Notes under the pieces: model-generated
Seen by the model: the letters and a program-made list of their open reading frames with translations, nothing else
The model's database searches: none
What the model was told of the DNA's origin: nothing
Part shown: positions 7,404 through 28,700 of the stretch, one piece after another
Layout: every line of letters begins with the position of its first letter
Numbering within the stretch: position 1 is the stretch's first letter
Program-made: the position numbers and the translations under genes
NCBI GenBank assembly: GCA_964304625.1
Contig: OZ199839.1
Location: 11,946,479 to 12,010,478, forward strand
Reading direction: 5' to 3'
Source: Kudoa neothunni
Taxonomy: Eukaryota; Animalia; Cnidaria
Length of the DNA: 64,000 nt

Positions 7404-7634
7404 GGACCTTCACTAGAAACATTCTTCTTTCGGATGTCCTTTCGACACCTCCATGAACTCATGCTGCATTAACACCATGAGCTTTGTTATGCTTTATTTT
7501 GATCAAACTTGGACTCATCAATTTCTACGACTGTATTTTCTCCTCCAATTATAATGTTGTCGAATCCTAAACTATCGACCATCATTTGTCTAAGATAATG
7601 AGAATAGTTAGTGATAGTTTGAGAAGAGTGGCCA
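7404..7634 (-). mobile_element. Internal, TIR-less fragment of a Merlin transposase
   Basis: Aligns with ~6720-6940 and encodes IIIGGENTVVEIDESKF. No termini visible. Confidence 0.85.
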
Positions 7635-10389
7635 TTAGAGATCATGAAGTTAGAAACGAAAGAAATTGGAAGCTTGTTGAAAAAATACCATAAATTATTT
7701 TGGAACGAACTTGGATGTTTCAATGGAACAAAAACTGCAATATCACTGAAACCTATTACATCGCCTATTTTTTGTAAGCACCGAAGAGTATCTCTTATAA
7801 GAAAGAAATGGATTCAACAGAACTCGATAGACTGGTAGAGGCTGGCATATTGAAAGCTATCAGATTCAACAGATGGGCCACAACTATAGTTGCTGCTGAA
7901 AAGATAGGTGGTGGAGTAAGAATTTGTGCTGATTTTTCTGTCACATTGAACCCTCATCTAAATGTGGATATATATCCACTACCTACAATAGAAGACATCA
8001 TGTCTACTATTGCCGGTGGAGGGTCGTTTAGTGTTATTGACTTAGCAAATGCTTATCTTCAAATGGATTTTGAGAATACTTCAAAGGAGTTTTTGAAGAT
8101 CGCAACACATAAAGGACTGTTTGAATATCAGAGGCTTCCTTTTGGGGTTGGCGTCAGCCCCTGCAATTTGACAAAGAACAATGGATATACTATTGAATGG
8201 TATATCAGATGTTCAATGTTATTTGGATGACATTATTGTTACGGGGAAAACGAGGAATGAACACTTGAGAACGTTAGATAAGGTGCTGAATATATTTCAG
8301 CAGCATGGTCTTCGCCTGAACAAAGAGAAATGTGCTTTCCTTAACGAATCTATTGAATATTGCAGATACAATGTTTCCAGAAAAGGCCTAATGAAAAGTT
8401 AAATGGTGTGGAAGAAGTAATAAGGATGCAAAAACCTTCTAATAAAACAGACATAAGGATATTCTATGGAATGCTAAATTATTATAGGAAATTTATTCCA
8501 AATTTTTCTTCCATACCCAATTCCTGTATAACTTGCTGAAGAAAGAAAATGAGTTTACTTTCGAATAAAAATATGCTAGTCTATTTTGATCCATCTCTAA
8601 AATTATTATTGACAACAGACGCTTCTGGCAGTGGTGTTGGTGCAGTACTATCCCATGTTATGGACGATAACCTTGTGAGACCTATCTCATTTATTTCTAG
8701 AAGCCTATCAAAAAGAGAGGAAAATTGTTCCACGATCGAAAAAGAAGGATTAGCGATTATATGAGCAATTCAGAAGTTCCATCATTACCTGGAGGGAAGA
8801 TGATTCACCTTGTTAACTGAACATAAGCCATTATTAATCCTAAAAATGGGATACCGAAGACAGCAGCGGCTAGAATCCAAAGGTGGGCAGTCATTATCTG
8901 GATACTTGTTTGAAATCAAATATCGAGCCGGGTCTGAAAATAATCCTGGTGATTGTTTTCCTCGCCTTTTTATGAGAAAGAAGGACTCTAATGAAGAATT
9001 TGAAGTGACAATTGATATGATTGATAAATTGGCTGTTAAAAAAATTTTAAAACATGGACACTTCTCCACTTTACGCTTGAAGAACTGACGAGAGAAACAA
9101 TGGAAGATGAAATTCTAAGTAGTGTTATTAGTCATTTCAAGAATGGATAGAAAAGCAAAATTCCAATCGGATTGGAACAATTCAAAAGGAGGAAAAATAA
9201 GATATCGTTTTTGAATGGATCATTGCTACTTGGCGGACGGATTATCATACCCACATCACTCCAAAGTATAGTGTTGAAGGAATTGCATGCGGGGCATATG
9301 GGAATATCAAGAACCAAAGAACTAGCGAGAAGTTATGTTTGGTGGCCTAACATAAACCGTGATATTAAAAGGGTAAACTTCAGCTGCCTCTCACGCCAGG
9401 AAGAAAAACGTAAAATGCCTATTAAAAGCAAAGTACAGCAATAGGAGAATTGTTCACGTCCACTTGAAAGAGTATATTTCGATCTTACCGGTCCTATTAA
9501 AGGGTTGTATTTGCTTATAATGGTCGACGCTTATTCAAAATGGCCTGAAGTGATACCTATGAGTTCGCCAAATGGAGATAGAACTGTTTCTGTTATGAGG
9601 ACCTTATTTTCACGTCTTGGTAATCCTGAAACAACGGTGTCTGATAATTGTCCCAAATTTGTCCCCAAAGAAATGAGGGATTTTACTGCTAGCAATAACA
9701 TCAGACATAAATTTATTTTAGCTTACCATCCATCTTCCGACGGACTGGCAGAAAGGTTTGTACAGACCTTCAAAGGATGCCTTGATAAATCTGATAGTGA
9801 CATACAAAAAAGTATCGATCGGTTCCTGCTTCATCAAAGAAACACACTACACAGCACAACATCAATGGCGCAATCAATCTGTATGATGGGAAGGAGGCCA
9901 GGTAGTTTCTTCGACACGTTGAAGATCCAGCCAGGGAAACCAAGAATGAATAGAGAAAAGGGAACACGAGTACTAGAGCCCGGTGAAACTGTACTGATTC
10001 GAAATTTCTTGAAAGGCCCGAAATGAATTAAGGGTAAAGTTCTTAGAGCGGTTGCACCCCTTACATATTTGGTGTTATCCAACGGACGAGAATTAAAAAG
10101 GCATATTGACCATTTGATAATGATTCCATACACTGAACCAACTGATGAGATTGATGCAAGCCCTGTTGAAGAAGATATACATCAACAACAAATGCCAGTG
10201 GCCAATACTGAAGAACCAATTATAGATTCTACGGCTGAGGAGGTGGAAAACCCTAATCTTACTGACGATGGTGTATCATCTGATAGCTAAGATGTAAATG
10301 AAGCAACCTTAAGAAGATCTACAAGACAAGTAAAGAAACCAGGTTGATTTGACTTGTTTTACTTCTAAATAAACCTGGGAATGAAGAGA

Positions 10390-10499
10390 TGTTATGTTGG
10401 TAGATTAATACAGGAGATTAACAAACCATTAGCTGGGGCGCAATTATTATTGTTGTTGTTATTGTTGCTTTGTGGTGTCTCTCCCTTACGTTCACAATA
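10390..10499 (+). repeat. Gypsy 3' LTR
   Basis: Preceded by purine tract GGGAATGAAGAGA. About a dozen substitutions and 2 indels versus the 5' LTR (manual count). Confidence 0.9.
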
Positions 10500-11390
10500 T
10501 CAAGTGCTTTAATATCACCAAGTTAAACATAGCACCGATTACAAGAACCATTTGAAAGAAAAGTCTGCAGATCAGTTTGAATTAAAAGAAATATTTTATC
10601 TGAGAGTGAAATATGGATGACTGTATCAAAATATTGATGTGTATGAGGTATAGAGTGGAAGGATGGCTATACCAAGTTATATTGAAATGATTTATTTGCC
10701 ACATTGTTGATGAATTGAAGTAAATGAGTTTCCGTTAAAGACTTTAGCTGATTTATAGGGAAAATTCGTTTCGAAATTAACAACGGCACATGTGATTGCA
10801 CCTGACTTTTATCCTAACTATAAAAAGTTTGAATGTTTAAAGTGGATTACACATAATGATGAAGTTAATAATGCAGTTATATGTATATTTTCGACAAATT
10901 TTGATTTTTTCAAAATAAAACTTTAATATGTACGAGATAATAAATCCTTCTCTGATTCCATTCCTAGTAAACCTATCCTTTGTCGAAAAATAAGACTCAT
11001 GGATACTATTGACACTTTTTTTCTCTCGTCGAACATCACTGGTATAGGGAGGAAATAAGAATTATTTAAACGAATCTGTTTATAAAATATATAATGATTC
11101 TCTAATTTATTGGGCTTATTCTAGCCATTCTAACCTCAAACATCTTGCAAGGTCAATTTATTCTATCCCAGTCCAGTGAGTTCTGCGGAATGTAAAAGAC
11201 AAGCCTAAAAGGCTGGATTAATGTCACATAAGATCAGTAATCGTTTAAACCAATGCCATTTTGAAAAGTTTGTTCTTCTCAGAAATTATGAATCCTCTGA
11301 ATAATTATAATAGTTGTTGAATCAGATTAAACGTTCGAAGGTTTTTTAAAGGCATTGCGTAAACCCGGCTGTTTCAATATGGAGTATCTA
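10500..11390 (+). mobile_element. 3' half of a hAT-superfamily transposase remnant
   Basis: Peptides HVIAPDFYPNYKK (~10790) and, across a frameshift and stop, SNLKHLARSIYSIPV.SSAECKR..KAG....ISNRLNQCHFEKFVLLRN (~11125-11290). The latter matches the hAT C-terminal dimerisation motif. Confidence 0.7.
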
Positions 11391-11449
11391 GGGTGGGACG
11401 CGGACAAATTTTATTGAACGTTATACCACCCTGATTAATATGCAATTAG

Positions 11450-12950
11450 GAAATCTGAGAAAGTATCGATAATTGGATGATAAAGTTAAAATAATAAACT
11501 ATGATGATATAAAAAATTTCGGTAGCTTGAATGCTAAACCCGTTGAGATATTTGAATTTAAATCGGCATCTTCCTTAAACAACATAATATTAAAAAATAG
11601 CAGTATTCTGGAAGATTATAACAATGGGGACCTATATCACAACAGAGAAACCTTAAGAAAAAATAATTTCAACATATTAGATTCTAAGGTTAAGTAGTGG
11701 ATTGAGCTAACCAGATCACGTAATATCGAACTCTCTCAGGATGATATAATTAAAAAGTCTACGATTACTCATATAATGTTAAAACACAATTCTTAAAGTT
11801 GATAGAGGGTGGTACATGTTGGTTCTAAGGATTTTCTTCGAGAGTTGGGTGGAAAGTAACAAATTCATACGTAAATCCAAGAATGTTGTTCCTAAAATAA
11901 TATCCGCTTGGAAAGATCAACTGTTAAAGTTGATTGGAAATTATGATCCAAAAGATATTTTTAGTTGGATGAAACTGGAATATTTTACCAGCAAAAGATA
12001 GTTAAAATATCATTTAAATTTATATCTCCATATGAAATTTAATATATGGTTATGCATTTGAAATGGAGGAAAACTTGCACGGTTCTAGAAAATCTAGAGA
12101 GAGTAACAATTGTTGCGATCTACTCGATGTCAGAAAAAAGACTCATTAATAATTCGCAATCATGAAACACCTTGATGCTTCCGTGAAATAAACGACCTCA
12201 CACCTCCCTATTAAACTAACGTGAAGACTTTATTTTTTCAAAATATCTGATAGTATTATTGAAGCTAAAACTTCTCAATGTAAGGTAGGAATCATATGAT
12301 CTGGTAAAAATTTCAAATCTTGAACTCTGGAATCCCCCACAAGGAACAACCAGCGTATTGCAACAATCAGATCAAGGAATTATTTAAGATTGTTAATACA
12401 TTTACAAAAATCATCTGACGAGTTATTTGATCAATAAAGTTACTGTTAATATTATTAATATTTTTGATAACAATTCAAATAATGATCCTTCAGATTTACT
12501 TGAACATATGTACACGATGAAAGTAATGTGGAAATTAATGAGTGAAGAAACAATCGAAAACTATTTTAATAAATAATTCTTGTTAATAATTGTGGGTCAG
12601 GAGGTATTATCATTTCGACTGGAAGAAAATCCCTAGAAAAATCAAATTGAATGTGGGGTTAACATAGAAGAAACTATTTCATTTGAAGATCCAGAAGATA
12701 AATATGTTAACTCAATAAATAATGAAGTCGACGCAATGAATGTATCCTTTACTCATGAAAATTATTAAAAACCATGCATCGTTTTTTCCATTAATGAAGT
12801 TATTGAGCATTTTAATAAACTGAGAGAAAATATTTTTGCTTATGACTTACTTATGTTATAAAATAAAACAAAATGGGACTCTTTCGTCTTTAAAATAAGT
12901 CACGGTTCGTAATGGAATGATTAGATAGCTGATTATTCTAAAAAATCTAC
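11450..12950 (+). mobile_element. pogo/Tigger transposase remnant (second, divergent copy)
   Basis: CENP-B-HTH-like LDSKVK.WIELTRSRNIELS, then NYDPKDIF.LDETGIFY, GSRKSRERVTIV and PPQGTTSVLQQSDQGII. Many stops; boundaries approximate. Confidence 0.8.
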
Positions 12951-13149
12951 ATATTTTCGAATAATTATGATGTATTTATTCGATATTTGTTGTTTGTTGT
13001 TTAACATTCAGCTTTGTCAGAATATCTACGAGTTATCATTAATATAAGAAAGAAAATGTAATTTTTGAATACAAAATACGACCGCGCGTCATTATTATCC
13101 ATCCGGCATAATGTTCGTGCGAGCATGGATACTGTGTACCGCAGGAATA

Positions 13150-14163
13150 CAATTTTAGGGATAGCTACCGAATATCGTTAAATCCGCGCGAATGATTTCC
13201 CCAAGATTTGTTAATAATTTTTGCTTGCAATGAGGATAACTCTATCTGTTATCTTATCAATATTTGTATCTTTAAAGCGCCATCTAACTGTGTAAAATGT
13301 AATGGAATTAGCCATTCTATACATCGAAAAAATTGGCGATGCTGCTCCAAAATATGCAGAACAGAAACATCCATTTTTGAGTAGATATTTTTCAGTAATA
13401 TGAGAATTAAACTTCATGATTTTTTGGAGTTGTCATATTACTGGTTGGTGAGCGCAAAAAGCGTTAACCTGGACACAATTATCGGGCACTCTTATCAAAC
13501 AATTAAGAAATATTGTCGCTATCTTCGTCAGCTGGTAGCAGATAGTTTACGCTTTGAGGAAATAATTATTAAAGAAGAAAATATAATCGAAGACATTGAT
13601 GAGTCAAAATTTGGCAATGTGGAGCATAACGAACGGCATGGGTTCTTGGAGGTGTAGAAAGGACATCAGAAGGAAAGATATTTTTGGGGGAAATTCCTGA
13701 CAAAACCGCCGACACTCTTAAACAAAACGTTAAAACTTTCGTTTACCTGGTTTGATTATTATAACAGATTGCTTCAAAAGTTATGGAATACTAAATAATT
13801 TCTTCACTCATCTCCCCGTAAATCACAGTATAGAATATGTGGATAGTACCACAGAGGCTCATACAAATACCATGGACGGAACCTAGGATGCTATCAAATA
13901 GAAAATATCACCGAGGAACAGAACATCTTCGGTTAATGAAGATGTTTTTGTCAGTGTGGATGGATGGTATCAATCAATTTATTGGTGAATTTCAATGGGG
14001 ATGAAAATTCAATCTCGGTTTATGGGATGGTTTTATATCCTCGATAAAACAACTTTAATTTACTATCATTTAGATTTGTATTTGAATGTTTTTGGTAGTT
14101 TTTTTCTATTGCGCTAATCTTATGTTAATTTAATGTTAGGGGGGTTTATATAAAAGTTCAGCC
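13150..14163 (+). mobile_element. Merlin (IS1595-like) transposon, degenerate
   Basis: Motifs EDIDESKFG, IITDCFKSY and VNHSIEYVDSTTEAHTNT. The right end ...AGTTCAGCC resembles the TIR at 6249; the left boundary is uncertain. Confidence 0.85.
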
Positions 14164-14474
14164 TAATTTTTAATATAAACAAAAATTTCATAGTATTAAA
14201 TGAGTGTTGTTAAAATGGTCATTAATTAAGGCATTAACACCAGCTGTACCAACTGTTATCCCTATAATTGATAAGTAATAATAATTTTACATTAGCAATA
14301 ATTAGTTATCGAAATTTTTTTAACATTAATTTAATCAAAATTTTTTATTATTCAAATAACATAATAGGCCATTGAAACACATTTCTATACAGAACACACT
14401 AATACTACTATTAAAATAAATATTTCTAAATTACTACGTAACTTGGTTCTGTATGGAATATAATCGCACTACTA

Positions 14475-17400
14475 TCATGCTTTGACGTAAATATTTTCAC
14501 ATTTTTCATAAATTTCATTCTTTTTGACGCTTCTGTATCGTATTACAGCACCAGCGATTGCCATAGCCACCAAGGCTACTGCAGCACCTGCCACAATCAT
14601 CTTGAAATAATCTTTTGCTAATACATTATTAGACTCTCCTAATGCTGCAGCATTTTGATATGAATACGCTTGTTCATTTTCGATCTCAGTAGGGTCTTTA
14701 AAATCGTCGGTTACAGTTACCATTTCTGTGGTAGTTTCAGCTGTTTCAGCTGTTTTAGTAGATGATGGTTGCTGTCTAAATTTTTAACATAATCTTCGTC
14801 ATTTTTTATCGCTATATCAAGTTCTTCCTTAAACGTTTCGGTTTCTTTTGGGATAGTGGCTTTGATTTGACCGGTATATTCTATAATTTGAGTAGGATTT
14901 TTATTTTGATCGATGAAATTCTCTATTATTGAGATAAGTTCAGTGTATTGTATGTGCAATTCGCCAAACTTGTTATCATCAGTTTCGGAGTCAATTTTCT
15001 TTAATATAGATTGAATTTGTTTTATTAAGTCGGCAGATCTAGATTTTTTTTCGGAATATTCCTGTTCAAGGTCATTTTTTTGGTCAGTATAATGCGTTTT
15101 GGCTTCAGAAATGGTTTTTGAAACTTTTTCCAAATTCTCTTCAAATATATCGTTCAAAGTTCGTTTTTCAGCTTCCATTTCAGTAAATTTACTGCTCAGC
15201 ACCATAGGAATATCACTTCTATCATCGCCGGCTTTGGCTAAAATAGCCTCATGTGCTTTTTTGTATTCTTCAAACTTATTTAAAGTTGTAGACTTTTCAT
15301 TTTCTAATAATTTAGTCTGTGATTGACCATTAGTTGAAATTTCGGCTTGTTTTTCCTTTATCAAATCATTACTTTTTTTGTAATGAGACTCGATATCTTC
15401 CAAGAGGCTATTAAGCTTTCCTTTTTTTTCAGCGAGTTTTTTGTTAGCTTCATTAATTGTAGAGGCTGTTTCTTTCAGTGAATGCAGTTTCTTAAGGAAT
15501 GATTGAAGTTTAATTCTTTCGTTTGAAACGTTCCTGGTGTAATTTTCAACAAATTGTCTTTCAACGGCAATCTCACTATTCACGTTACTTTTTCATAGGT
15601 AGACAATTGTGCCAATTCCTTTTTCATTTTGTCGGTTGTAGCTTTGAATGAATCAAACTTTTCTTTCAAATCAACTTTCACTTGTTCAATTCCTTTCACA
15701 ACTTCATATTTGAAAGTGTAGATTTATCATTAATAAATGTGTTATATTTTTGAAGAAGGCTCATTATGCCACTCTTGGCGGTTTCCAAAATGTTGTTGCT
15801 CTTCTCATTTTCGGTAGAAATTGAAGGAAAATTCATTTTCATGATTCTTTATTTTATTATCTACTTCAATAACAGATTTATCACACTCGATATTCAGATC
15901 ATTCAATCTCGAAAATTTATTTTCCACTGAGAAATCTCCTTTCAAGTGTCGCACAATTATTGTACTATCGCTAATAGATTTAATCTCTGCTACCTTGTCG
16001 TTAGCTTCTTTGATGGTTTCTTTATAATAATCCTCCTCGTTTTTAAGACCAGTTGTTTGGGTTTTGAGTGTTTCTTTGTATTTTTTGAATAAATTGGTGA
16101 GGTCATGTTTGGTATTTGCGAAAGAAGTTTGATCCATGATTTCGACTGTTTTTAGTCCATACTCAAGAGATTCCACCATATTAGCATGCACATTTTCCAT
16201 ATTTTTGACTTCTATTTCGTAACCGGATTTCAAGGATTTCAATTTGTTAATTTCGTCAATTATACCAGAGATAATGAGTTTAACACTTTCATAGGATTCT
16301 TCGTAGGTTTTAATATCGTCTGATAGTTTGCCAACTTCCTTATTGAGATTTAAATTTAAACGTGATGTTTCTACATCTATTAATAACTTAAATTGATCAG
16401 GCGTAGTATCTTTACTAGTTGATATTCTCTTTTTTGCTTCTTCTATATTTTTATAATCTTGGGTTAATTTTTGAGCACGCTCATTGATACTATTCACAAG
16501 TACTTTATTATTGTTGATTTTGGATTGAACTTCAACAATTTTGGATATTAAATTAGTACTCTTTATCATAGTTTGGCTCAATTCACTTCCGGTAACGTCA
16601 ACCAAGTTAGAAAACAAGTCTGATAATTCATTAGCTTTACTTTTGAGAAATGAGGATTTATTTTCGGATATTGACAATTTGAAGTTATTATTATCTTCCC
16701 TCACTTTTTTTATGGTATTAGATGCTGTGGTCAAGCTGTCTCCAATTGATGTTAATTGGTTAATATCAACTTGGGATTCATATGAACCTAAATTTCTTAA
16801 CAAGTCCACCTTTCTACTTTCAATATCAATCAATTTGGTGGCAGGATTTTTAAAGGGTAGCATTTCATCTAATTTTCCCAGATTAAGTTTTTCTCGATAT
16901 TGTGGAATTTCTTCTTTTGTTATGTGTTCGATTTCAGATATTAACTTTTTGTAGGTATTTAAAGTATCTGTATTCTCAGTTTTCAGTTGGTTGAAAGTTA
17001 TTTGCCACTGTTCAACATTTTCCTTAACTTGAGTGTACAATTCTTCAACTTTTCCAAACTTAATTTTTAATGTTGTGTCAAATAATCGTCTTGTGTTCTC
17101 CAAAAATGTTTGAATTTTCTCGTTTAATATTTTACCGGAAAACATTCGACGTCTTAATCCGGATTTTGACGGGAGTTTGTCGATTTGTGATATAAAATAA
17201 TCGATTTTCTCTTTTATAGGTTTTATGCGGTTAATGGCATCAGAAGTGGCTTTAGGTAAATTGTCTATATTTTCTATTGTTATCTTAATTTTAGTTTTAA
17301 GTTCTTCAGTTTCGGAAATCTGATTTTTATACGATTCAAGCACTGCTTTTTAGTTCACCAATTTTTGTTGTCATTTTATTTGACAATTCTTGCGAGATAT

Positions 17401-18381
17401 AAGAAGCCGTTGATGACAAAACATTCTGTGTATTTGTTAGCGAACGTTGAATTTCATCTACTTTGTCGACCGATACGCTAATCATCTTCGAATTAAGTAG
17501 AATTGAAGTGAGCTTTTTAGAATCATTCAAATAACTTTCAAACAATTCTTGATTGTACTTTGTGATAAAATAGTTCATCTCAGATTTGATTTTTTCAAAG
17601 TATGGAACCATTGCATTTGTCATATTAGTATAGAAAGGAGTCATTTTATTGTCTCTGTCTTCAATTGACGCAATAAGCTCAACAGTGGGATCTTTCGGGC
17701 AGTGATATGTTTGAGCATAATAACTTTGTAGATTCTTTTCTAAAACGTGTATTTTTTGTATGGAATTTTGTAGGTTTGAAGTTGAATTTTGTATATTAAA
17801 CGTTGATTTATTGGATAGACAATAGTTATAATCCTCACGAGTTACTGTTGGACAAATTTGAGATCTGTATTTAAAAATAATTGAACTTTCTCAGAATATT
17901 TTAAAAAATTATTTATCAAGTAAAATAAATTCTTGACGCCTTTGAGACAATTGACGGCTCTTTCGCAACGATTTCGAGTATCAATATCCGTTTGCACTAT
18001 TGACCCGCCTTTAGTATATTGTTTAAATGGTTCTACTCCATAGATTTTAAACCAATGAATCCTCCAAAATTTGAATATATGAAGCATATCATGCAACATC
18101 TTCGTATTCATTATATCTTTGTGAGATTCATAATTTTTCTTGCTGTTTTGAAGGAAATTCAACCGTTGAATGCAACGTTGAGATAATGATGTTAATAATT
18201 CACGTTGTATAAGATAGTTATTCCTTGTTACGTTATAGTAATGACACGCACCGTGTCTATCACTATAGTCTATTAGAGGAGTAGTGGAATAAGATGACAA
18301 TGTCATCAACAACACGGAGTCTATGCAACTAATTAGTCAATCTAAATAATAATAGTTTTTACATATTAGTTGATTGAACAT
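14475..18381 (-). pseudogene. Orphan ~1,290-aa type-I membrane coiled-coil surface protein, interrupted by six frameshifts (pseudogene or indel errors)
   Basis: Exon 1 (18381-18363) and a 42-nt GT-AG intron (18362-18321) give the signal peptide MFNQLIYSVLLMTLSSYS. ORFs 17842-18315, 17336-17644, 15805-17343, 14717-15583 and 14475-14723 join by small indels near 17870, 17345, 15830, 15715, 15590 and 14775. K/E/N/I/L-rich heptad-like body, Thr-rich linker, TM MIVAGAAVALVAMAIAGAVI, basic stop-transfer RYR, short tail. Confidence 0.8.
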
Positions 18382-19125
18382 AGTCGAAAATTTTGTTATG
18401 GCTTCTGACTTTCCTTATCAGCAGTTTGTTAGATTAGTTTATTAGGTTATTACACAATCGTAAATATATACAAGAAATGTTTTAATCAGCTTATACAAAT
18501 TATATCTATAATAGGAGTCTGTATAGATAATTAATAATAGAAGAATGAATGCTATTCAATTTTAATAAAATGTATTGTAGTGCAATTTGTAAGTGTATTA
18601 CATTTAGGATATTTAATTGTTAGTTATTTATTTTTGTGGAATTATAATTTTCTTTAAATTTAATAGTTTTAAAAATTTTGATTTAATAAGTAATTATTAA
18701 TAGCATAACTTTTGTATTCTAAATATGAAAGTCACAGTCACAATTAATACCCGAAGGTTTTAGATTATTAAATTCCACGTGATCAAATATAATCAAATCA
18801 TCATCATCATCACCGATAATGCATTGTCTTTCTATTCATATTAAATTAAACTAAATGATCAAATAAAAACAAAATGAATAAATTCATCTCTATTTGATGG
18901 ATGGAATTATATAAAGATGGAGACATTCAATGAGAAGCATTTTTGACATTATCAATTAATTCATCACAAATACTTATCAAGAATTTTCATTATATGAGAT
19001 ATGAATGGACAAAAATGAATAAATGTATAAGTATATAAGTGTAATAGATAATTAATGATTATTTTTTTAATTTTTCCCAAAATTAAATTGCAGAACCTTC
19101 ATTGATACCATTAACCCCTTTAACG

Positions 19126-19350
19126 CAGGCGTTCTCAACCGGGGATAAATTTACCCTTGGGAGTAAAATATAAAAAGACAGGGGGTAAACTAAGTAACGT
19201 CAAAATTAGATGTATAAATTTTTGCATAATCGGTTTGGGATGCATGATATAATTCCTTAGGAATTATATTATGTGGGGATATTAAAATCAATAACAATCT
19301 GGGGGGAATTCTTTTAATGTTTTTAGGAATAAGTTTTTAACAGTTAATTA
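19126..19350. mobile_element. One end of a hAT-like MITE
   Basis: CAGGCGTTCTCAACCGG...TAAATTTACCCTTG matches the terminus of the element at 57618-58176. The other end is not found. Confidence 0.5.
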
Positions 19351-22300
19351 TAAAACTATAGCGACAAAGTCCCGCTTCGCGCAAACTTCCTTGCCCGGCC
19401 AAGTAGACTAAAGCCCTGAGTAGGTCATGGTCATGTCAGTTTAAAGTAAATTAAGAATATTTAGATAAATAATACAAACATGAGTCGTTATACCCGGCTA
19501 CGCTCGAGGTTTTGGGAATATCTAATTCAGGAAAAAATTGAAAAAAAAAATGATTTAAATTATATTTTTTAAAATAATAAACGTTTTCATTATGTTAATA
19601 GCACAAATATTTGTCGAAAATTTACTGCGCGAAATAAACAGCCATAAACGAAATATAACAAAATTTTACTTAATAATGTAATTAGTTTTTATATTTAAGA
19701 AGAAAAAGAAAAAAACCTAATACAAACAAATGAACCTCATTTCGTTTAAATCTCATCATCATTATTTGCTGCATCCGTGGTTTTAAGAAACCATGAAAAG
19801 CAAATAGAAATCAACGTATACGTGAGGAATTACACCGGAATACAACTATACAGTCAACGTATAAAGGGATATAGAATAAGAAATTGAATTCTCACTTGAA
19901 TTCTTTTAGGGGCCTGTTAGTTGAATCATACTTATAACAATGTGGTAGATTAAATTTTTTAACATTAAATCTTATAAACTCTTACCAGCGAAATTTCGTC
20001 AAACACTAAATTTTGAAAAAATGCAGACAAACAAATTCAAAATACTTCCACAAGCAATATTCAAAGATATAACAACATAATACAAAGTCACAAATAAAAC
20101 TAATGCGTTCAGTTAATCACGATTTATGGTTACTTTAAGATTTGAGGTCAAATTGTCCCTGGAATTGGATTGTAGTAGTCTTAAGAAGATAGCGAACCGA
20201 TATTTTACAAAATGTACTTCTTGGAAGATTTGCATATGCAAACTCAGAATTGATCAGCAACACGTTTCCAGAATAGATACAGATATGTATTTTTCTAACA
20301 TCCAAGATATGTTTAACAAGCAAAATAGCCAAACCTACCATTTTTAGATTGTTTGGAAATCCACCCAATTTCTCATCCTATTTCAATGAAAGATACTAAT
20401 GGCATTCTTAAGAAAATAGAGGTTGATATAACACTTCAAGTCACTATTAATGGTCCCCATAAAGTTAGATCAGCGGCGTGAAGTATTAGACATTTTTTTG
20501 TAAAATTAACGCAACACACTTCAAACAATAATCGAAGCACAATAATCGCATAACCTACTGCAACACCCAAAATTAAATGTCGGGGATGATGAATGTTATC
20601 AGTTTTGCACTCCAAAAGTTGGCAAACAAAAGTGTGTCGTGTAAAGTTTCTACTTATATCGCTTAATGATGATACAATAATGTTCCACATAACATGGTAG
20701 ATATATTCCGAAAAATAAAATCAAAGAAACATTGTTTCATATAAATAAATTTGAATGAAATTTATATAAAAACTGAATTTAAATAGGCGAGTAAGATCCA
20801 TAAAGATAAGAAAATGATAGCATAGCCAGTTACCGTAATATCTCCCTATAAACTATATTTTTGGTCCGACCATTCATTTGGAGAAAAACTGTATAAATTG
20901 TGTTTGGAACCTACCCTGGAGTTGGCGACATACAACTGCTCATGAGAAAAACGCGGTTCCTCCAAATTTAAATTGGCAACTTTGAAGGTTTGCTCTTGGG
21001 CCTTATTTACGAACATTGCAAAGCATGGTTTGATGGGAAATAGCAGTCTTCTAAAATTAAAGGTGGCGTCTGAAGGGGCAATCGGAATATTTACATTCTC
21101 TTAGGCACAACCAGTTACGATAGTGGCCAAAATAAGATAAGACATTAGCGACTTTACCATTAAACGAGTGCCGTAACACAACCTTGGTGAATCCAAACTT
21201 CTTATCAATATAATTGGAATGGCTAACTTTAGAAGAATCTTGTGCGAAGGAACCCCCGAAAGCTCTAGAGTCTAGACTGTTGAGGAATTCAACAGGGAAA
21301 TTGACACACTGATATTTGTTCACAACAGTGACATATGGTTTATACACTGAAGAGTCGCCTGGAATAAGACGAATCAATCTATCATTGATTTTGTTTACGG
21401 AATGGTTTGTGGGGGTTTAGATAGTTCGTTCTGAGAGCCAATTTGAGTATGAAAAGTTTGTTTGTATTTCTAGTAAAATACGGTCTATCAATTCATCCAT
21501 GAACAAAACCAGGTTTGGCACGGAGCATAGAGGATACATCCATCGGACTCAATGGTAAGTTGATCATCACCAATCCGTAGTATTTCTGAAATAGATTGAC
21601 TGGCTCCTTATTCGTTGATGATTTGCACTCAAATATTGGCGGTGAGATGGATGGTTTAACGTTTGCCCATGTGGAAGAGAACTTTATGGAACATTTTACT
21701 TGGTCATATCTTGTACCTCTCGTTATTAAGGGTAGAGTTTAACTAAAATCGCCAGACAAAATCATTGTGATTCCGCCAAATGGAATGTTTTTGTATGTTA
21801 AATCCCTTATTCTTCTATTTAAAGCTACGAAAAACACTCTGTTTGCCAACGTGCATTCATCCCATATGATGATCGTGCATCTGGTCAACAATTGGGACAA
21901 ACCTGCCTCCTTGCTGATTGCACATACTTCGGCTCCATCACCCTTAATCGTGATTAGCAACATAAATATACTGTGGGCCGTGCCATTCCCTGGTAATAAA
22001 GTGGCTGCAATACCCGGAGAAGCAACAACGAGAAAATTTTAGAATCTATTCTTAATTCGGCAAATAAATGGTTTGACACTAATGTCTGACCTATACTACC
22101 TGGTGCACCAAAAAAAAAACGTTACAAACACCTATATTGTAATAAATGCTCCCCAACACTGTTTTGAATGCAAATCGTCGGTCAGTTGTCAGTTTCGTCT
22201 TGTTTATTTCTACAAACTCGGATAATTGTTCAGTGTTGTAGGTTAATTCTCTCTGGATTTCGTTTGGAAGAGAGGCGCAAAACGTTTTGTCCAAATGAGG

Positions 22301-23731
22301 AAATCCGTATGAATTTAACATTACTCCATCCATTTGAATTAAGTGTTGTCTGTGTCAATTAGGGTCATGTTAAAAATGTCAGAATTAAAAATCACGTTTG
22401 GCATTAAACTGGTTTGTTACAGTTGATACCGCTAACCTTCCGACATAGGTTTCCTAAAAAGTAACCACAGTTTATGAAGCTGGCGCATTTCGCAATTTCT
22501 GATCAACTGTGCGAATAATTTTCGTAATTGACGTGGACTGTTTGCATGAGCAGCTTCCCTTAATATACATTCTCAGTGGTTGTCTCCCTTCAACAAATCA
22601 CTTTCATTGCACGCTTCAAGGAATATTGGATATACCTGGCCGTGAACCTTTTTATGATTTTCAAAAGTTTTAGGCCCATTTACACAATGGAGCAACATCC
22701 TCAAATAAAAACATTCTTGATGTGAAAGATGTACACTGTAAACTCTTCCTATTGTAGAGTCGAATCGTATGCCTGGATGGCCTTCAACTGGACATCCTCT
22801 TTTCCCAATGCCAACTATTATCCGACCATATGTAATAAGATGAGACAGAGCGAATTCGTCATTCTGGCATAGGCTGAAAAAGCGGTTAATCTCGTGTCCC
22901 TTTGGATTTTGTAACCGATTCAACAAAGTTTCGTCGGTGAAATAAATACGCTGACCGTTCTCCGAAATCCCTCACTACTGCTTATGTAGCGACCAGGCTG
23001 GTAATTGGAAACTTCATCCAAACGATCTTCTTGATTAGCAGCAAACATGGTCGCATCAAAACCTTTGTTTACATACTTGCATATATATTTGGGGGTCTTG
23101 ACTGAATTGTAATACTCTACATTAATATGAGTATTGAAAATCTTCGTCAACAAAGGACAATAGGGAACAATCCACTTATTTTCTATGATGATTTCCCTAT
23201 CGTTGTTCAGATGGATTGACGCACCAAAACCCCATCTTCAGGTTTTCTTCTGTAAACATGATATCTATCAGTATTCGTCTGGGATAGTTTTTGGTGCATT
23301 CTCTCTGATCATACATGTATGGGCTTTTTGGATTCAACGCACCACAGAGACCATGGTTGTTCTTACAATCTGGAGCAATACTGGATCTACACCTGGGTCT
23401 GGTAATTCGTTCGATATGAATTTGTCGATATCATTGGAACGCAGTTTCTAGTTCATCTAGACCAATATATGAGCGTGTGGAAGCCCTCTTTTCTGTCACT
23501 CAATACTATACATATAACACTGAATTTCACCATAAAACTTCAATTTATGAATTAAAATCATCAAAACATTTAACTTCAAGTTGAATACTCTATCTACTAT
23601 GTCCAGTCTCTCTTTAGATGCTTGGCCAGGAAATAACTCTTCATTCAGTTAGCTCCAAAATGGATTAGATTACATGTGAATGTTATAAATAGGTCTGGCC
23701 CTCTAAAACATCGAACGTAGGTCATGGCAAG

Positions 23732-24114
23732 TGTCATGTACATAATCTCTTCTTTTAACAACGTTAAGTATTATAACCTCCTCCCAGCTCCAAAGTACAA
23801 CACTTAACTTTTTCCTAGCAACCGACTAATGTGATTCATAATCATCGTAAATGATTCTTCCCAATATTCAACAAATAGAAATACTCATTCCTTAACATCC
23901 ATTTCATAACCTTATCCTACAAGACGCCGGTAAATGAATATCTCCAAACATCACGTATTCCACGACGAGTTCACGCCACAACGCGGGTTGCTTCAATACA
24001 AAAATGTAGCATTTAAACATTGTAGTAATTTATCATTAGTCTAATCCCCTTTGTTGTTTTACTTTCAAACTGTTTTCTTTTACTGGCGCTAGCATTCATA
24101 ACTTAGTTACAACA
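23732..24114. mobile_element. Solo LTR inserted in the Helitron Rep coding region
   Basis: 383-bp TG...CA insertion that is absent from Helitron copy 1 (empty site CAGCTTGTCATGACC at ~5211). Flanked by a degenerate 5-bp TSD GCAAG/ACAGG (ancestral ACAAG). Confidence 0.8.
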
Positions 24115-25668
24115 ACAGGCTGCATTTTCACGTTCATATAGCATGGTGAACCTACAAAAGTCGATGGCAAAGTATACAACCGTCCCCGCCCATTTATTTC
24201 ACCGTTGCTACTAATGCTATCAATTAAATTGATGTAAGAATCAACACGAAGTCTATATTGTTTCGCTCTGATAAAACAAAGTCTCTCTGATTCCATCTTC
24301 ACAAACATATCTACAGCATATTGTTGGAATAATGTCCAAAAGTGATGAAGCATGTTAAAACTATTTTCCCCTTCCATAAAATGTAGAGAATAGAAATTCT
24401 GACATGAAACACTTTTGTTTGCGTCAATCTGTAGAATATGAAAATGGTAACCATCTTGATCATAGACATTAGTTAATGGATATTGCAAAACATAATGCGA
24501 TCTGTATGTTTCGCTTATTCTTTATATTCTGTTATCCTTATTCCTCAAAACAATATCCTTCGTCAATGCTGCTCATCCGTCATTGCGATGGCCACCTCAT
24601 TTCAAGTTGGAGAGTTGTATTTTCTCTCATTTTCTCCTTGTAGAAGCTTGTCAGAGTTTATAATTATATCAAAATCAGAAGACGGGTGCATTTCTAAGTC
24701 ATGCCTAAAACTGTGGATGTAGCTAGTGTGTCTGTGTAACATACATATCTTGAAGCGCTAAAATAATATTATGCCTATGCTAGAGATACATGTTGGATCG
24801 ATTTTGAGCTTGAAAATACATGTTTTGTATGAAATATAATCTCAAGAATTTCGTTGCTCATTTTCAGAAGTCAATAGCGATTCAATTCGATGACACATTC
24901 GACCGTGAACCTTAAAAGTAAAGTAGGCATGAATCTGTCCCTACAAATTACGTTCGCTCCAAAAGATGTCATCTGGAAAGTGCAGTTGTATTTTCGGATA
25001 TTTTGTAGCAAGTTTCTTGAAATTCCGGAGTCTTTATAGAAAATGAGATGAATCAGGTAGTGTATCAAAAATAACATTACCGCCGGAACAACACATACCC
25101 GAAAATTCGTTTATCCACTTCTTAGCGCGGCATTTTGGACAAATTTTCGACATTTTCCAAATTGTAATATTCGTTTCATTTTCATGTTGTAGCAACGTTC
25201 GTAATGCAAAGCGACCATATTCCAAGTATCATCAGGCATACTTCGCGTTTGTTGACCTAATAGAACAGGAGTGTAATAAGGTTCAGGTACAAATTTACTG
25301 TCTAATCCTGTGTTGTGTTCATTTATAGGTGACACTGCAGGACTCTGTTGAGTCGTCTCACATACACGTCGATTTCTATTTCTTACTCTATTTGCTTCTC
25401 GTCTTCGTTCTCTTTGCTCGTCGGCAATTACGTTGTGAGTGTTGGTGTGACTCCTGAGAAGAAATAGAAGCAAGTGGATTTCGATTTGAAATATGCATTC
25501 ACTGTGATTCTAAATCACACTCAGGCCATATTGTTGTTTCCACAACTCTCCTCTCTTGTATTCGCCTAGTTCGTCGTAGCGATGAATGATTCGATGAATT
25601 GTGCATACATATTGTCCGTCCATGTGAACAGTCTAATCGAAAGCAGGGTTGAGTGTGCGATATCTTGG

Positions 25669-25798
25669 TGTTATTAATTTGATGTAGCGCTGTAGAAAAA
25701 CACACTGTTTATGATGATAACGGATAAAATGCCGCTTAGATGGATTATCCATTGTTTATTATATTGCAATGTTAAATAACATATGCAAATCCGTCACA
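25669..25798 (-). repeat. BEL/Pao 3' LTR
   Basis: TG...CA, 130 bp, adjacent to the PPT. Confidence 0.95.
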
Positions 25799-28700
25799 CT
25801 CCCCCAAATTAAGTTCAGAATCCATCAATTTCTAAGGGGTAGAGTTGAGCCAAAGATCTCTTAGATGTCTTTCGGTTACCAAACTTAATCGTCGCCGACC
25901 TTATTTGATTATCATGACCCTTTAGCAACTGTATGACTCTAGCAATTTTCTAGTTAAGCTTTGAGTCCTGGTCATGCACCAGAACGATATCGCCAACTTT
26001 AGGTGTCAGTTCACTAGGCGATTCAGTAATCAACCGGTTGTTGTATCTTTCTTTCAAACTCAATAGGTATTCTCTTCTCCAATGATTATTGAATACTGAA
26101 AGTAATTTTTGACCCTTTTTCCAATGATTGATAATTTGTTCCTTCCTTAGATCCATTTGAAATGTTTCCAAATCATCCTCAGGCTTTAAGGTATAAGGAT
26201 CACGTCGTGGATTCAGTATCAGAAAATCATTAGGTGTGATGGGGCGAATAACGGAATCAGCATCAACATAGGTTAATGGTCGATTATTCACCACATTTTC
26301 CATTTCGAATAAAAATGTCGACAGATGAGATAAGCTAAGTATCTTCTTTTTGGTGGTATATTGAAAACAGTTTTTGACAATTTTGATTAATCTCTCATAT
26401 ACGCCTCCCTTCCAAGGAGCAAACGCTGGTGTGAATTTCCATACTACATCATTATTAGTGAGAAAATCTTTTATTATGGATTCAGCCAGTCCGAATTGTG
26501 TTGCGTTATCCGATAAAATTTCTAGCGGTCTCCCTCTTCGAGCGATAAACCTACGATGACACATCAAGAACTCTTCAGCGGATAAATTGTGAATGATTTC
26601 GAGGTGTATTGCCCTTACAGCTAAACATGTGTAAAGTAAAGGCAGATCCAGACCTTTTCATTATCTGATCCGATCATTACCCCAATTGGGCCAAAATAGT
26701 CCAGGCCAACATGAGTGAATGCAGGAGATACGTTAACTCTAGAGACAGGAAACGGTGGAACATTGTAAGGTTTACTCTTTAGTATTTTGCATTGATGACA
26801 TTTTCTAATGAATTTTTTAACTTGAGATCGCCCTTTAGGTATCCAGTATTGCGATTGAACCACTGAAAGCGTATAAGATACACCACCATGAATCGCTCTA
26901 AGATGAGCATCCATGATAATGAGTTTCGTGTATTTTGTTGGTCTTGGTAACAATTTAGGATTAATTTCATCATATGCAAGTTGGGCAAAATCAAGTCGAC
27001 CAGCACATCTGACTAGATCATTTTTGTCGAAAAAAAGTCGTGGTAAGTTGTTGATTTTCACAGGTTCTCCATTTTTAACTGATTCGTATATATCATGAAG
27101 ATGGCTTTTTTGAATCCACAAGTCCCACATCATTCTAGCTCTTTCTAATTCTCGAGCCGTAAGACATCCATTTATTTTGATGTTTTCTCTAGTGTTATAA
27201 CAAAAACGATTACACCGCGCGGTAACCCGTAGTAGCTTAAGTAGACTAGTAAAATTTTCAATTTCAATAGAGAATGGACTTTGTATTAAGTGATTATTTG
27301 AATCTTGAACAACCAATGTTTTTATTTGCGTAGATTCATGCTTTGCTAATTCGACCAGCGCTTCATTAGGAATATTAAGGTTATCTACAGCATGCATAGA
27401 CTTCCCATAACGATTCATCCGATTGTAGCCAAGTCGGGCCATTCCACCATAAAGAGCTTTCAGACAGTTCAGATACGAGCATTCCTCTTGTAGGTATATC
27501 CGCTGGGTTTTCAGCAGTAGGTACATATTTGATTGTTATATCCAAATTGCATTTGAGTTCATTTATTCTATTTTTGACGAATATCGATAAGTTCTTTTTT
27601 GAATAATACCAATACATAACGCATTTGGAGTCCACAAAGAGCATACATTTTGATATATCAATTAACAATTGGCTCTTAACAAAATGCAAGGAACTGCCAG
27701 CGATAATAGCTCCCATCAATTCGAGATTCGAGTCTTGGTATGGATAGCTTTTTCATTGGAGATATTCTAGCCTTGGCAAAAACTAACTTGGAATACCATG
27801 AACCAGACTTTTTGTAGCAAATGTACACACAGCAGGCATAAGCATTCATGGACGCATCAGAAAAGGAGATTCGTTGAGGTTCCTCAGAACCCTGAATATC
27901 AATGAAGCGTTGAATTTCAAGTTTTTCGATGCCAGTAATATCATTCATTATTTTATCTATTTCACTTTTGGCTTCGTCACCAATATAATCGTCCCAATTT
28001 TTTGATTCCATCCATAAATTCTTCAGAAGTATTTTGCCCTTCAACATCGTTGGACAAAAAAATCCGAGTGGATCGAATACTTTGGATCATTGTTTTTGTC
28101 ACATCTCGTTTGGGACATCGCAGAATTGGTGCCGAAACCTCCAATTCTCAGGCTGTCAGATTTTGTATTCCAGATTAAGCCTAAGACATTTATCTGTGTT
28201 GATTGAAGTTTCTCGTTGGTTGGAAATAATTTGTTAAATTCATTGCAATTCGAGCTCTATTCCAACAGATTCATTGAGCATTTTTTGAAAATACTTATCA
28301 TTTCTTCTCGAGCAGTCATCACTTCCTCAATAGTATCTAATCCAATTATGAAATTGTCCATGTAAACGTTCGATAAAATTTTTCGGCATAGTTTTGAATT
28401 TGAACTTTCCAAGTGATGTTTTATAGTCGAACAAAGAATAAATGGAGATGCCTTTATTCCAAATGGAACTCATTTTAAATCGATATATCAAAACATTGTT
28501 TTTAGAAATGCCATTGTTCAAATTTTTGATACATAAGAATCTCGTCAGGTCTCTATCACTTTCTTGAACACCGATTTGCAGAAAACGCTTTCTCAATATC
28601 GCATAAAACTATAAATCTTTTGAATCGCATACGTAGTAGAATCCCGGTAAGATCATTCAACAGCATAGGTCCATCCAGTAAACAATCATTAAAACTTTTC

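What the first reader, a model, noticed from the sequence alone, without database searches (positions are those of the whole stretch)
14475..18381. Orphan ~1,290-aa stalked surface protein with invasin/adhesin-like architecture
Seen in sequence: five ORF-track fragments plus a hidden 19-nt first exon rebuild one protein. It has a signal peptide, a ~230-aa head with 7 Cys, a ~1,000-aa almost Cys-free coiled-coil-like stalk, a Thr-rich linker (QPSSTKTAETAETTTEMVTVT), one TM helix and a 21-aa tail. It has only one intron, whereas the neighbouring ADAM and LCAT genes have many. Established knowledge: a tiny signal exon, short intron, huge second exon, disulfide-containing helical head, helical stalk, TM and short tail is the layout of Plasmodium reticulocyte-binding-like (Rh/RBP) invasion ligands. 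Inference: a convergently built, probably undescribed host-binding ligand or surface-antigen family in an animal parasite. I claim no homology to Rh/RBP.
Basis: partly seen in the sequence, partly recalled or inferred. Interest (0 to 1): 0.8.

Follow-up and report, generated by a model that had tools for sequence, protein, structure and literature searches.

The report
Variable subtelomeric surface-protein gene in Kudoa
This is one of about 19 copies of an undescribed, fast-diversifying gene family for a long all-helical membrane protein that clusters at the chromosome ends of the tuna-muscle parasite Kudoa neothunni, and its seven frame breaks are most likely assembly errors, not decay.

Summary
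On the minus strand, 18381-14475 encodes a ~1,290-codon type I membrane protein: a 19-nt first exon, a 42-nt GT..AG intron, then one huge exon.

The assembly breaks the frame at seven single-base places. Each is absent from intact paralogues. At each of them, short-read contigs from one sample (probably the assembled specimen) differ from the assembly by exactly one base. The copy has no in-frame stop in 1,275 aligned codons. The gene is therefore probably intact, and the breaks are consensus errors of a ~7x HiFi assembly.

It is not a singleton:
- About 19 loci exist in this 40-Mb genome, which matches the published Kudoa neothunni assembly. At least five have uninterrupted 1,276-1,284-aa frames, and some are true pseudogenes.
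- 11 of 19 lie within 300 kb of chromosome ends.
- Flanks are 95-99% identical between copies, while ectodomains differ by 11-30%.
- Copies are mosaics, and dN/dS is about 1, rising to 2-3 in young tracts.
- The cytoplasmic tail is 86% conserved.

Outside this genome only one 105-aa metagenome fragment matches. Pfam, PDB and fold searches give nothing specific.

It has the genomic hallmarks of a variant surface-antigen or adhesin family. Expression, surface location and host binding are untested. The scan's first readers had flagged other members elsewhere in this genome.

The parts
18363..18381 (-). Exon 1: ATG plus 16 nt, encoding the first six residues of the signal peptide and one base of the next codon
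   Evidence: The ATG, its length and the following GT are kept in seven subfamily-A copies, including two only ~40% identical in protein (L023, L027).
18321..18362 (-). Putative 42-nt intron (GT..AG) with in-frame stops
   Evidence: Only the third AG gives an open frame, and it is kept in L027 where an upstream AG is lost. L024 encodes a similar N-terminus without an intron. The published median intron in this genome is 49 bp. No RNA evidence: contigs across it are unspliced and DNA-like.
14475..18320 (-). Exon 2: rest of the signal peptide, ectodomain, TM, tail and stop (14475-14477)
   Evidence: 1,275 codons are in register with intact paralogue L020 and none is a stop.
17572..18276 (-). Membrane-distal head (~235 aa, 6 Cys), the most variable part of the family
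   Evidence: mean pairwise identity 28%; paralogue model is all-alpha, pLDDT >80 over most of residues 20-230; no specific fold match.
14775..17571 (-). Helical rod (~930 aa) of long helices joined by short loops, with no internal sequence repeats
   Evidence: paralogue model, helices of 20-160 residues, mean pLDDT 74.5, pTM 0.31. (3.5-3.67 hydrophobic periodicity, 17-20 Pro per 1,280 aa). (no repeats).
14601..14774 (-). Thr/Ser/acidic linker, predicted disordered
   Evidence: sequence. (pLDDT 25-27 in the paralogue). (31% identity between copies).
14541..14600 (-). Single transmembrane helix
   Evidence: only 19-mer with Kyte-Doolittle mean >2.4..
14478..14540 (-). 21-aa cytoplasmic tail with two Tyr motifs (NEIY, NIY) and one Cys, the most conserved part of the family
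   Evidence: 86% mean identity, minimum 81%. (kept in subfamily B).
14765..17845 (-). Span holding the seven single-base frame breaks of the assembly (near 17845, 17347-17351, 15826-15827, 15706, 15598-15599, 15588-15593, 14765-14767)
   Evidence: absent from three intact paralogues. table 4: short-read contigs show a one-base length difference at exactly these seven places and nowhere else.
7404..30158 (.). Segmentally duplicated subtelomeric block that carries the gene, shared with the left end of chromosome 3 and in part with four other loci
   Evidence: Flanks are 94-99% identical over at least 4 kb each side, while the ectodomain coding sequence differs by 11-30%.

Best explanation
The locus is one member of a lineage-specific multigene family of the myxozoan Kudoa neothunni.

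Each member encodes a type I membrane protein with these parts, in order:
- a signal peptide split by a tiny intron;
- a hypervariable all-helical head with a few cysteines;
- a ~930-aa rod of long helices;
- a disordered Thr/Ser-rich linker;
- one TM helix;
- a strongly conserved 21-aa tail.

Shown here:
- The window copy is very probably intact in the organism. Its seven frame breaks are single-base consensus errors of a low-coverage assembly.
- The family sits mostly in chromosome-end regions.
- It spreads by segmental duplication, keeps its flanks and termini nearly identical, exchanges patches between copies, and changes amino acids in the ectodomain at or above the neutral rate while the long frames stay open.

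Inferred:
- The protein is displayed on a parasite cell surface with its variable head held far from the membrane.
- There it meets host molecules (attachment and/or antibody exposure).
- The conserved tail serves sorting or signalling.
- The family provides a repertoire of alternative surface variants.
For: Gene model and breaks.

Read check: contigs from four runs of one sample show one-base length differences at exactly the seven break places. Several of those contigs have no other difference. All depth agrees at 17845 in four runs, and at 15826, 15593/15598 and 14765 where they are covered by bridging contigs.

No decay:
- No in-frame stop in 1,275 codons.
- A neutral simulation at the same divergence gives about 28 stops.

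Family:
- 19 loci; five have open frames of 1,276-1,284 aa.
- True pseudogenes with 7-11 nonsense codons also exist.
- 11 of 19 loci lie under 300 kb from chromosome ends. The window lies ~75 kb from a (TTTAGG)n telomere.

Divergence pattern:
- Upstream flanks differ by 1.5-5.1%, ectodomains by 11-30%.
- The duplicated block spans ~22.7 kb.
- Mosaic tracts beat all 2,000 permutations in 8 of 10 pairs.
- dN/dS is 0.8-1.25 overall, 2.3 (bootstrap 1.4-4.2) and 3.4 (1.7-11) in young tracts.
- Mean identity is 28% in the head and 86% in the tail.

Structure: all-alpha models.

Intron: conserved across subfamilies.

Organism: assembly size, N50, three chromosomes, telomere motif and the 18,219-bp mitochondrial contig match PMC12239612.
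Against: - No RNA or protein evidence of expression, splicing or surface location. The published study found almost no parasite RNA reads.
- The reads laid are contigs from one sample, probably the assembled specimen. They test the consensus but are not an independent isolate.
- At 15706 and 17347 part of the contig depth does not show the length difference. These may be contigs that end there. A broken allele beside an intact one is not excluded.
- NG86 dN/dS is biased upward in A/T-rich genes.
- Clustered loci are not independent for the enrichment test.
- A K. neothunni plasmodium lives inside muscle fibres, where antibody pressure may be weak.
Confidence: 0.62

Rival explanations
1. The window copy is a true, recently dead pseudogene of the family. 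The seven frameshifts are real in the assembled haplotype, and the intact form in the reads is the other haplotype or a co-infecting strain.
For: The assembly itself. The family does contain real pseudogenes. The sample holds at least two sequence variants of this locus (table 3). At 17347 and 15706 not all contig depth shows the length difference.
Against: At 17845 all contigs in four runs differ from the assembly, and none was reported in the reference form. No nonsense codon occurs in 1,275 codons. Seven indels with none on the other lineage, and no substitutional stop, fit read-error mode. The assembly was made at ~7x coverage.
Confidence: 0.12
2. The family is a structural or cell-cell membrane protein of the parasite's own development (for example between the nested cells of the plasmodium, spore valve junctions, or gamete or self recognition). 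It would not be a host-facing antigen or adhesin, and its variability would reflect relaxed constraint or mating-type-like diversification.
For: Long helical rods are common in structural proteins. dN/dS near 1 over most of the gene is compatible with weak constraint. The conserved tail suggests a fixed internal partner. The parasite stage in tuna is intracellular.
Against: Open 1,280-codon frames are kept at dS 0.2-0.6. dN/dS is significantly above 1 in young tracts. The most membrane-distal part is the most variable. Chromosome-end clustering, gene-conversion mosaics and a pseudogene pool are typical of host-interaction families.
Confidence: 0.2
3. The gene is cargo or an envelope-like gene of a mobile element or endogenous virus, copied around with its flanks.
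For: The gene sits in a repeat-rich block with transposase, integrase and RT fragments. Six copies share at least 4 kb of flank on each side.
Against: Divergent intact members (L023, L024) do not share the flanks. The flanks themselves are composites of dispersed repeats with ~80% copies elsewhere that lack the gene. No terminal repeats or element genes are consistently linked. The coding part is far more diverged than the flanks, the opposite of a young element.
Confidence: 0.04

Closest known systems
Subtelomeric variant surface-antigen families of protozoan parasites (Plasmodium var/rif/stevor, Trypanosoma brucei VSG, Babesia ves, Giardia VSP)
   Same: Multicopy. Enriched at chromosome ends. 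Conserved 5' and 3' ends with a hypervariable ectodomain. Mosaic exchange between copies. Accompanying pseudogenes. A conserved short cytoplasmic tail (as in Giardia VSP).
   Different: No sequence or fold homology. The organism is an animal (cnidarian) parasite. There are only ~19 loci. No evidence of one-at-a-time expression or switching. The ectodomain is a 1,200-aa helical rod rather than DBL, VSG or Cys-rich modules.
Plasmodium reticulocyte-binding-like (Rh/RBP) invasion ligands
   Same: Short first exon for the signal peptide, short intron, very large second exon. Large helical ectodomain with a Cys-containing N-terminal region. Single TM and short tail.
   Different: No Pfam or sequence match. 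PvRBP2b aligns only at Z 7.8 and rmsd 9.6 A, within noise for helical models. No apical-organelle biology is known in myxozoans. Rh genes are not a diversifying subtelomeric repertoire of this kind.
Trypanosome elongated three-helix-bundle surface receptors (HpHbR, ISG65, factor H receptor) and VSG
   Same: Elongated helical bundles that hold a variable membrane-distal tip above the surface coat. They appear among weak fold matches (HpHbR Z 8.0; ISG65 and FHR at Foldseek E>1).
   Different: The matches are not above background. Those proteins are 250-450 aa and GPI- or TM-anchored. This protein is three to four times longer.
Candidate variant surface families reported in the myxozoan Sphaerospora molnari (bioRxiv 10.64898/2026.02.11.705288)
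   Same: Same phylum. The authors also propose contingency genes near telomeres and antigenic variation in myxozoans.
   Different: Those are Cys-rich VSP-like and RIFIN/STEVOR-like proteins. Nothing like this helical-rod family is described there, and my profile search found no such relatives.

Membership tests
Plasmodium Rh/RBP (reticulocyte-binding-like) ligands | Sequence homology to the Rh/RBP ligand domains | tested here: not met
   No Pfam hit at E<=0.1 beyond scattered noise in the window pieces or six paralogues. Profile versus PDB sequences gave only keratin or coiled-coil noise.
Plasmodium Rh/RBP (reticulocyte-binding-like) ligands | RH5/RBP2-type helical ligand-binding fold | tested here: inconclusive
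   PvRBP2b (6d03_E) Z 7.8, 169 aligned, rmsd 9.6 A. The tool's own bar for helical models is ~13. Foldseek E 2.1.
Plasmodium Rh/RBP (reticulocyte-binding-like) ligands | Two-exon structure (signal exon, large exon), type I TM, short tail | tested here: met
   This is architecture only and does not define homology.
Variant (contingency) surface-gene families of parasites, as a kind | Multicopy with enrichment near chromosome ends | tested here: met
   19 loci, 11 within 300 kb of ends (4.5% of the genome). Binomial P ~1e-10, with loci partly clustered.
Variant (contingency) surface-gene families of parasites, as a kind | Conserved termini and flanks with a hypervariable exposed domain under diversifying selection | tested here: met
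   Flanks diverge 1.5-5.1%, ectodomain 11-30%. Head 28% versus tail 86% identity. dN/dS 2.3 and 3.4 in young tracts, with bootstrap intervals above 1.
Variant (contingency) surface-gene families of parasites, as a kind | Recombination or gene-conversion mosaics and a pseudogene pool | tested here: met
   Permutation test on concordant runs, 8 of 10 pairs at 0/2000. dS jumps from 0.02-0.07 to 0.4-0.6 at about codon 500 in one pair. Copies with 7-11 nonsense codons exist.
Variant (contingency) surface-gene families of parasites, as a kind | Surface display and switching or exclusive expression | not testable with these tools
   No RNA run holds the locus. Contigs laid are DNA-like. The source paper reports almost no parasite RNA reads.
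Canonical two- or three-stranded coiled-coil stalk proteins | Long uninterrupted heptad register and oligomerisation | tested here: inconclusive
   Hydrophobic periodicity of 3.5-3.67 is present in many 70-aa windows. The model shows about 25 helices separated by loops rather than one continuous helix, with low pTM. Oligomer state was not tested.

The most novel reading that the evidence does not exclude
Kudoa, an animal, runs a protozoan-style antigenic-variation or variable-adhesion system. A chromosome-end repertoire of helical-rod surface proteins would share a common promoter-signal-peptide frame and a common TM-tail frame, be reshuffled by gene conversion from intact and pseudogene copies, and be expressed one or a few at a time during the blood and tissue migration of the parasite in fish.
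Probability: 0.15. Interest if true: 0.85.

Novelty: new variant of a known kind. Interest (0 to 1): 0.6.

Why it matters
Myxozoans are economically important fish parasites, and how they meet the host surface and immune system is almost unknown at the molecular level.

A family with no relatives, a 1,200-aa helical ectodomain and the full genomic signature of a variable surface repertoire gives concrete candidates for attachment or immune-evasion molecules, diagnostics and strain typing in Kudoa. It would also be an independent, animal-lineage origin of the chromosome-end contingency-gene strategy known from protozoa.

There is a practical lesson too. Frame breaks in this low-coverage assembly cannot be read as pseudogenisation without checking reads.

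Tried and rejected
- Pfam on the six window ORF pieces and on six paralogues: only sub-threshold noise.
- Word-indexed protein search with an intact paralogue: nothing.
- Profile search of 1.84 billion representatives: one real 105-aa fragment, 30-40% identical to all members and so from another organism, plus five coiled-coil noise hits.
- ESM-Atlas feature search: no usable hit.
- Profile versus PDB sequences: noise.
- Foldseek against PDB for the head and for the 1,194-aa model: no E<=0.001.
- VIA wide: best Z 10.8, generic helical bundles.
- Atlas fold search: TM <=0.38.
- Internal repeats in the rod by hhalign of alignment chunks: none, probability below 20%.
- Tiny introns as an explanation of the frame changes: rejected. 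Paralogues are colinear, with single-base differences only.
- Alternative genetic code: rejected. Intact paralogues read through with the standard code.
- Mobile-element cargo: rejected (see rivals).
- Rfam on the 18-kb contig gave nothing at gathering thresholds.
Folds and searches used naturally intact paralogues or single in-frame pieces by reference.
Full report
**What is in the sequence**

On the minus strand an ATG at 18381 opens a 19-nt exon. It is followed by 42 nt that begin GT, end AG and carry in-frame stops. From 18320 a reading runs to the stop at 14477-14475. In the assembly this reading changes frame repeatedly, and the table-11 ORF pieces are 157, 102, 512, 48, 288 and 82 codons.

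DNA alignment to three intact paralogues shows colinearity throughout. There are exactly seven single-base length differences private to the window copy, near 17845, 17351, 15827, 15706, 15599, 15588 and 14767. Tiny introns or another genetic code do not explain them.

**Are the breaks real?**

I laid Logan contigs of four runs from one sample on 14300-18500. The whole table of length differences consists of seven entries at 17845, 17347, 15826, 15706, 15598, 15593 and 14765. These are the seven break places and nothing else.

- Several contigs bridging a break have no other difference from the window, for example 17663-17958 and 15476-15620.
- At 17845 all depth in all four runs disagrees with the assembly.
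- At 15706 and 17347 part of the depth does not. Loose ends at those positions suggest contigs that stop there.

Read in register with paralogue L020, with gapped codons skipped and nothing filled in, 1,275 codons of the window copy contain no stop. dN is 0.145 and dS is 0.110. Random substitution at 12% gives about 28 stops.

The genome matches the published Kudoa neothunni assembly from a yellowfin tuna muscle sample:
- 40.2 Mb, N50 12.0 Mb, three chromosomes.
- (TAAACC)n at one chromosome end.
- An 18,219-bp mitochondrial contig.
- Built from HiFi reads at about 7x k-mer coverage.

I conclude, at about 85%, that the gene is intact and the breaks are uncorrected read errors. A broken allele beside an intact one remains possible.

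**The intron**

No RNA evidence exists. No RNA run holds the locus, the contigs across 18321-18362 are unspliced and DNA-like, and the source paper found almost no parasite RNA. Comparison supports the model:
- The ATG, the 19-nt length, the GT and the third AG are kept in copies only ~40% identical in protein.
- One divergent intact member (L024) encodes a similar hydrophobic N-terminus without interruption.
- A second subfamily has a 37-nt first exon and a ~44-nt intron at the same place.

**The protein**

Intact paralogues are 1,276-1,284 codons. They are rich in Lys, Asn, Leu, Ser and Glu, with 17-20 Pro. They have 5-6 Cys in the first ~215 residues, at most one in the rod and one in the tail. 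One hydrophobic 20-mer lies near the C-terminus.

AlphaFold models used family alignments:
- Head: all-alpha, mean pLDDT 74, above 80 over most of residues 20-230.
- Residues 91-1284: about 25 helices of 20-160 residues joined by short loops, then a ~55-residue disordered linker, then the TM helix. Mean pLDDT is 74.5 and pTM is 0.31, so the long-range packing is not known.

No internal sequence repeats were found.

**The family**

Six-frame searches of the genome find about 19 loci:
- Five are fully open.
- Several have one or two frame changes and no stops. Their status is unknown, given the assembly.
- Some have 3-11 nonsense codons and are true pseudogenes.

Eleven loci lie within 300 kb of four of the six chromosome ends. 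The window gene is ~75 kb from the telomere of chromosome 2.

The window gene lies in a ~22.7-kb block (window 7404-30158) shared with the left end of chromosome 3. Five other copies share at least 4 kb of upstream flank at 96-98% identity.

Between these copies the upstream flank differs by 1.5-5.1%, but the ectodomain coding sequence differs by 11-30%.

Nearest-paralogue identity switches along the gene. Longest concordant runs exceed all 2,000 site permutations in 8 of 10 pairs. In one pair dS jumps from 0.02-0.07 to 0.4-0.6 at about codon 500.

dN/dS values (NG86):

| Comparison | dN/dS | Bootstrap interval |
|---|---|---|
| Overall, pairs of intact copies | 0.8-1.25 | not run |
| L020 vs L021, codons 20-500 | 2.3 | 1.4-4.2 |
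| L021 vs L022, codons 300-500 | 3.4 | 1.7-11 |
| L020 vs L022, rod | 1.33 | 1.05-1.74 |

NG86 may inflate these values in A-rich genes. However, nonsynonymous divergence (10%) also exceeds the divergence of the adjacent non-coding flank (3%).

Mean identity by region is 28% in the head, 37-43% in the rod, 31% in the linker, 65% in the TM and 86% in the tail.

**Relatives elsewhere**

- Pfam, the word-indexed search, ESM-Atlas features and PDB sequences gave nothing.
- A profile of 20 family rows against 1.84 billion representatives found one true relative. It is a 105-aa product of a 526-bp ENA metagenome contig (GC 30%), 30-40% identical to every member, so it comes from another organism.
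- The other five hits were coiled-coil noise.
- Fold searches gave only generic helical bundles, with best Z 10.8. The T. brucei haptoglobin-haemoglobin receptor scored Z 8.0 and PvRBP2b scored Z 7.8, both under the tool's noise bar of about 13 for helical models.
- Full-text searches for Kudoa genome papers and for myxozoan subtelomeric genes found no description of this family. The K. neothunni genome paper contains none of the words 'surface', 'gene famil', 'orphan' or 'transmembrane'. A 2026 preprint on Sphaerospora molnari proposes other, Cys-rich variant families and telomere-near contingency genes in myxozoans.

**Interpretation**

Shown: one gene with the layout described, very probably intact; a lineage-restricted family; clustering at chromosome ends; conserved frame with a hypervariable exposed part; mosaicism; selection that keeps frames open while favouring or tolerating amino-acid change; a strongly constrained tail.

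Inferred: display on the parasite surface with the variable head distal, contact with host molecules, and use of the family as a repertoire.

Rivals, each given with its test in the Rival explanations section:
- A truly dead copy.
- A developmental or self-recognition membrane protein.
- Mobile-element cargo.

**Earlier notes of the scan**

First readers had flagged other members of this family elsewhere in the genome. One is the subfamily-B copy 67 kb upstream of the window (my L035). One is in a surface-gene island 3.36 Mb upstream (my L037). One is a 'giant coiled-coil protein broken by many frameshifts' on another piece. A follow-up agent's naming of Kudoa neothunni gave me the lead, which I checked against the paper.

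Noticed in passing
L034 (G000:C2:12030479-12040071), last ~150 nt: Chromosome 2 ends in (TTTAGG)n. This is the (TAAACC)n telomere motif reported for K. neothunni, one base off the usual metazoan TTAGGG.
   Followed up: partly
window 7404-30158 versus G000:C3:11428-34122: A ~22.7-kb segmental duplication between the right end of chromosome 2 and the left end of chromosome 3. It is 94-99% identical everywhere except in the surface-protein gene in its middle.
   Followed up: partly
L035 (C2:11875313-11879055), L036 (C2:~11779684-11783431), L025, L037, L038: A second, 25-30% identical subfamily with a 37-nt first exon and a ~44-nt intron. Two members lie in the same subtelomere as the window gene. 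Several show one or two frame changes without stops, which may also be assembly errors.
   Followed up: partly
L039 (C2:~1146300-1150130), L042 (C1:~17087850-17091710): Family copies with 7 and 11 nonsense codons in their first 350-450 codons. These are genuine pseudogenes, unlike the window copy.
   Followed up: partly
L045 (ENA metagenome contig, 526 bp): The only outside relative of the family. It is a GC-30% fragment with a 105-aa ORF, plus upstream homologous sequence interrupted by a stop. The source organism and sample type are unknown to me.
   Followed up: partly
window 13400-14117, 25950-28047, 40824-41801, 62340-63377, 7808-10026: The window is dense in mobile-element remains: ISXO2-like transposase-like ORFs just downstream of the gene, BEL/Pao-type integrase, MULE transposase, piggyBac-type DDE transposase, and RT plus integrase pieces.
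   Followed up: partly
   Followed up: no
tail, window 14478-14540: The cytoplasmic tail keeps two Tyr-containing motifs (N-E-I-Y and N-I-Y) and a Cys in every subfamily. It fits no sorting or ITIM consensus that I checked by eye.
   Followed up: no
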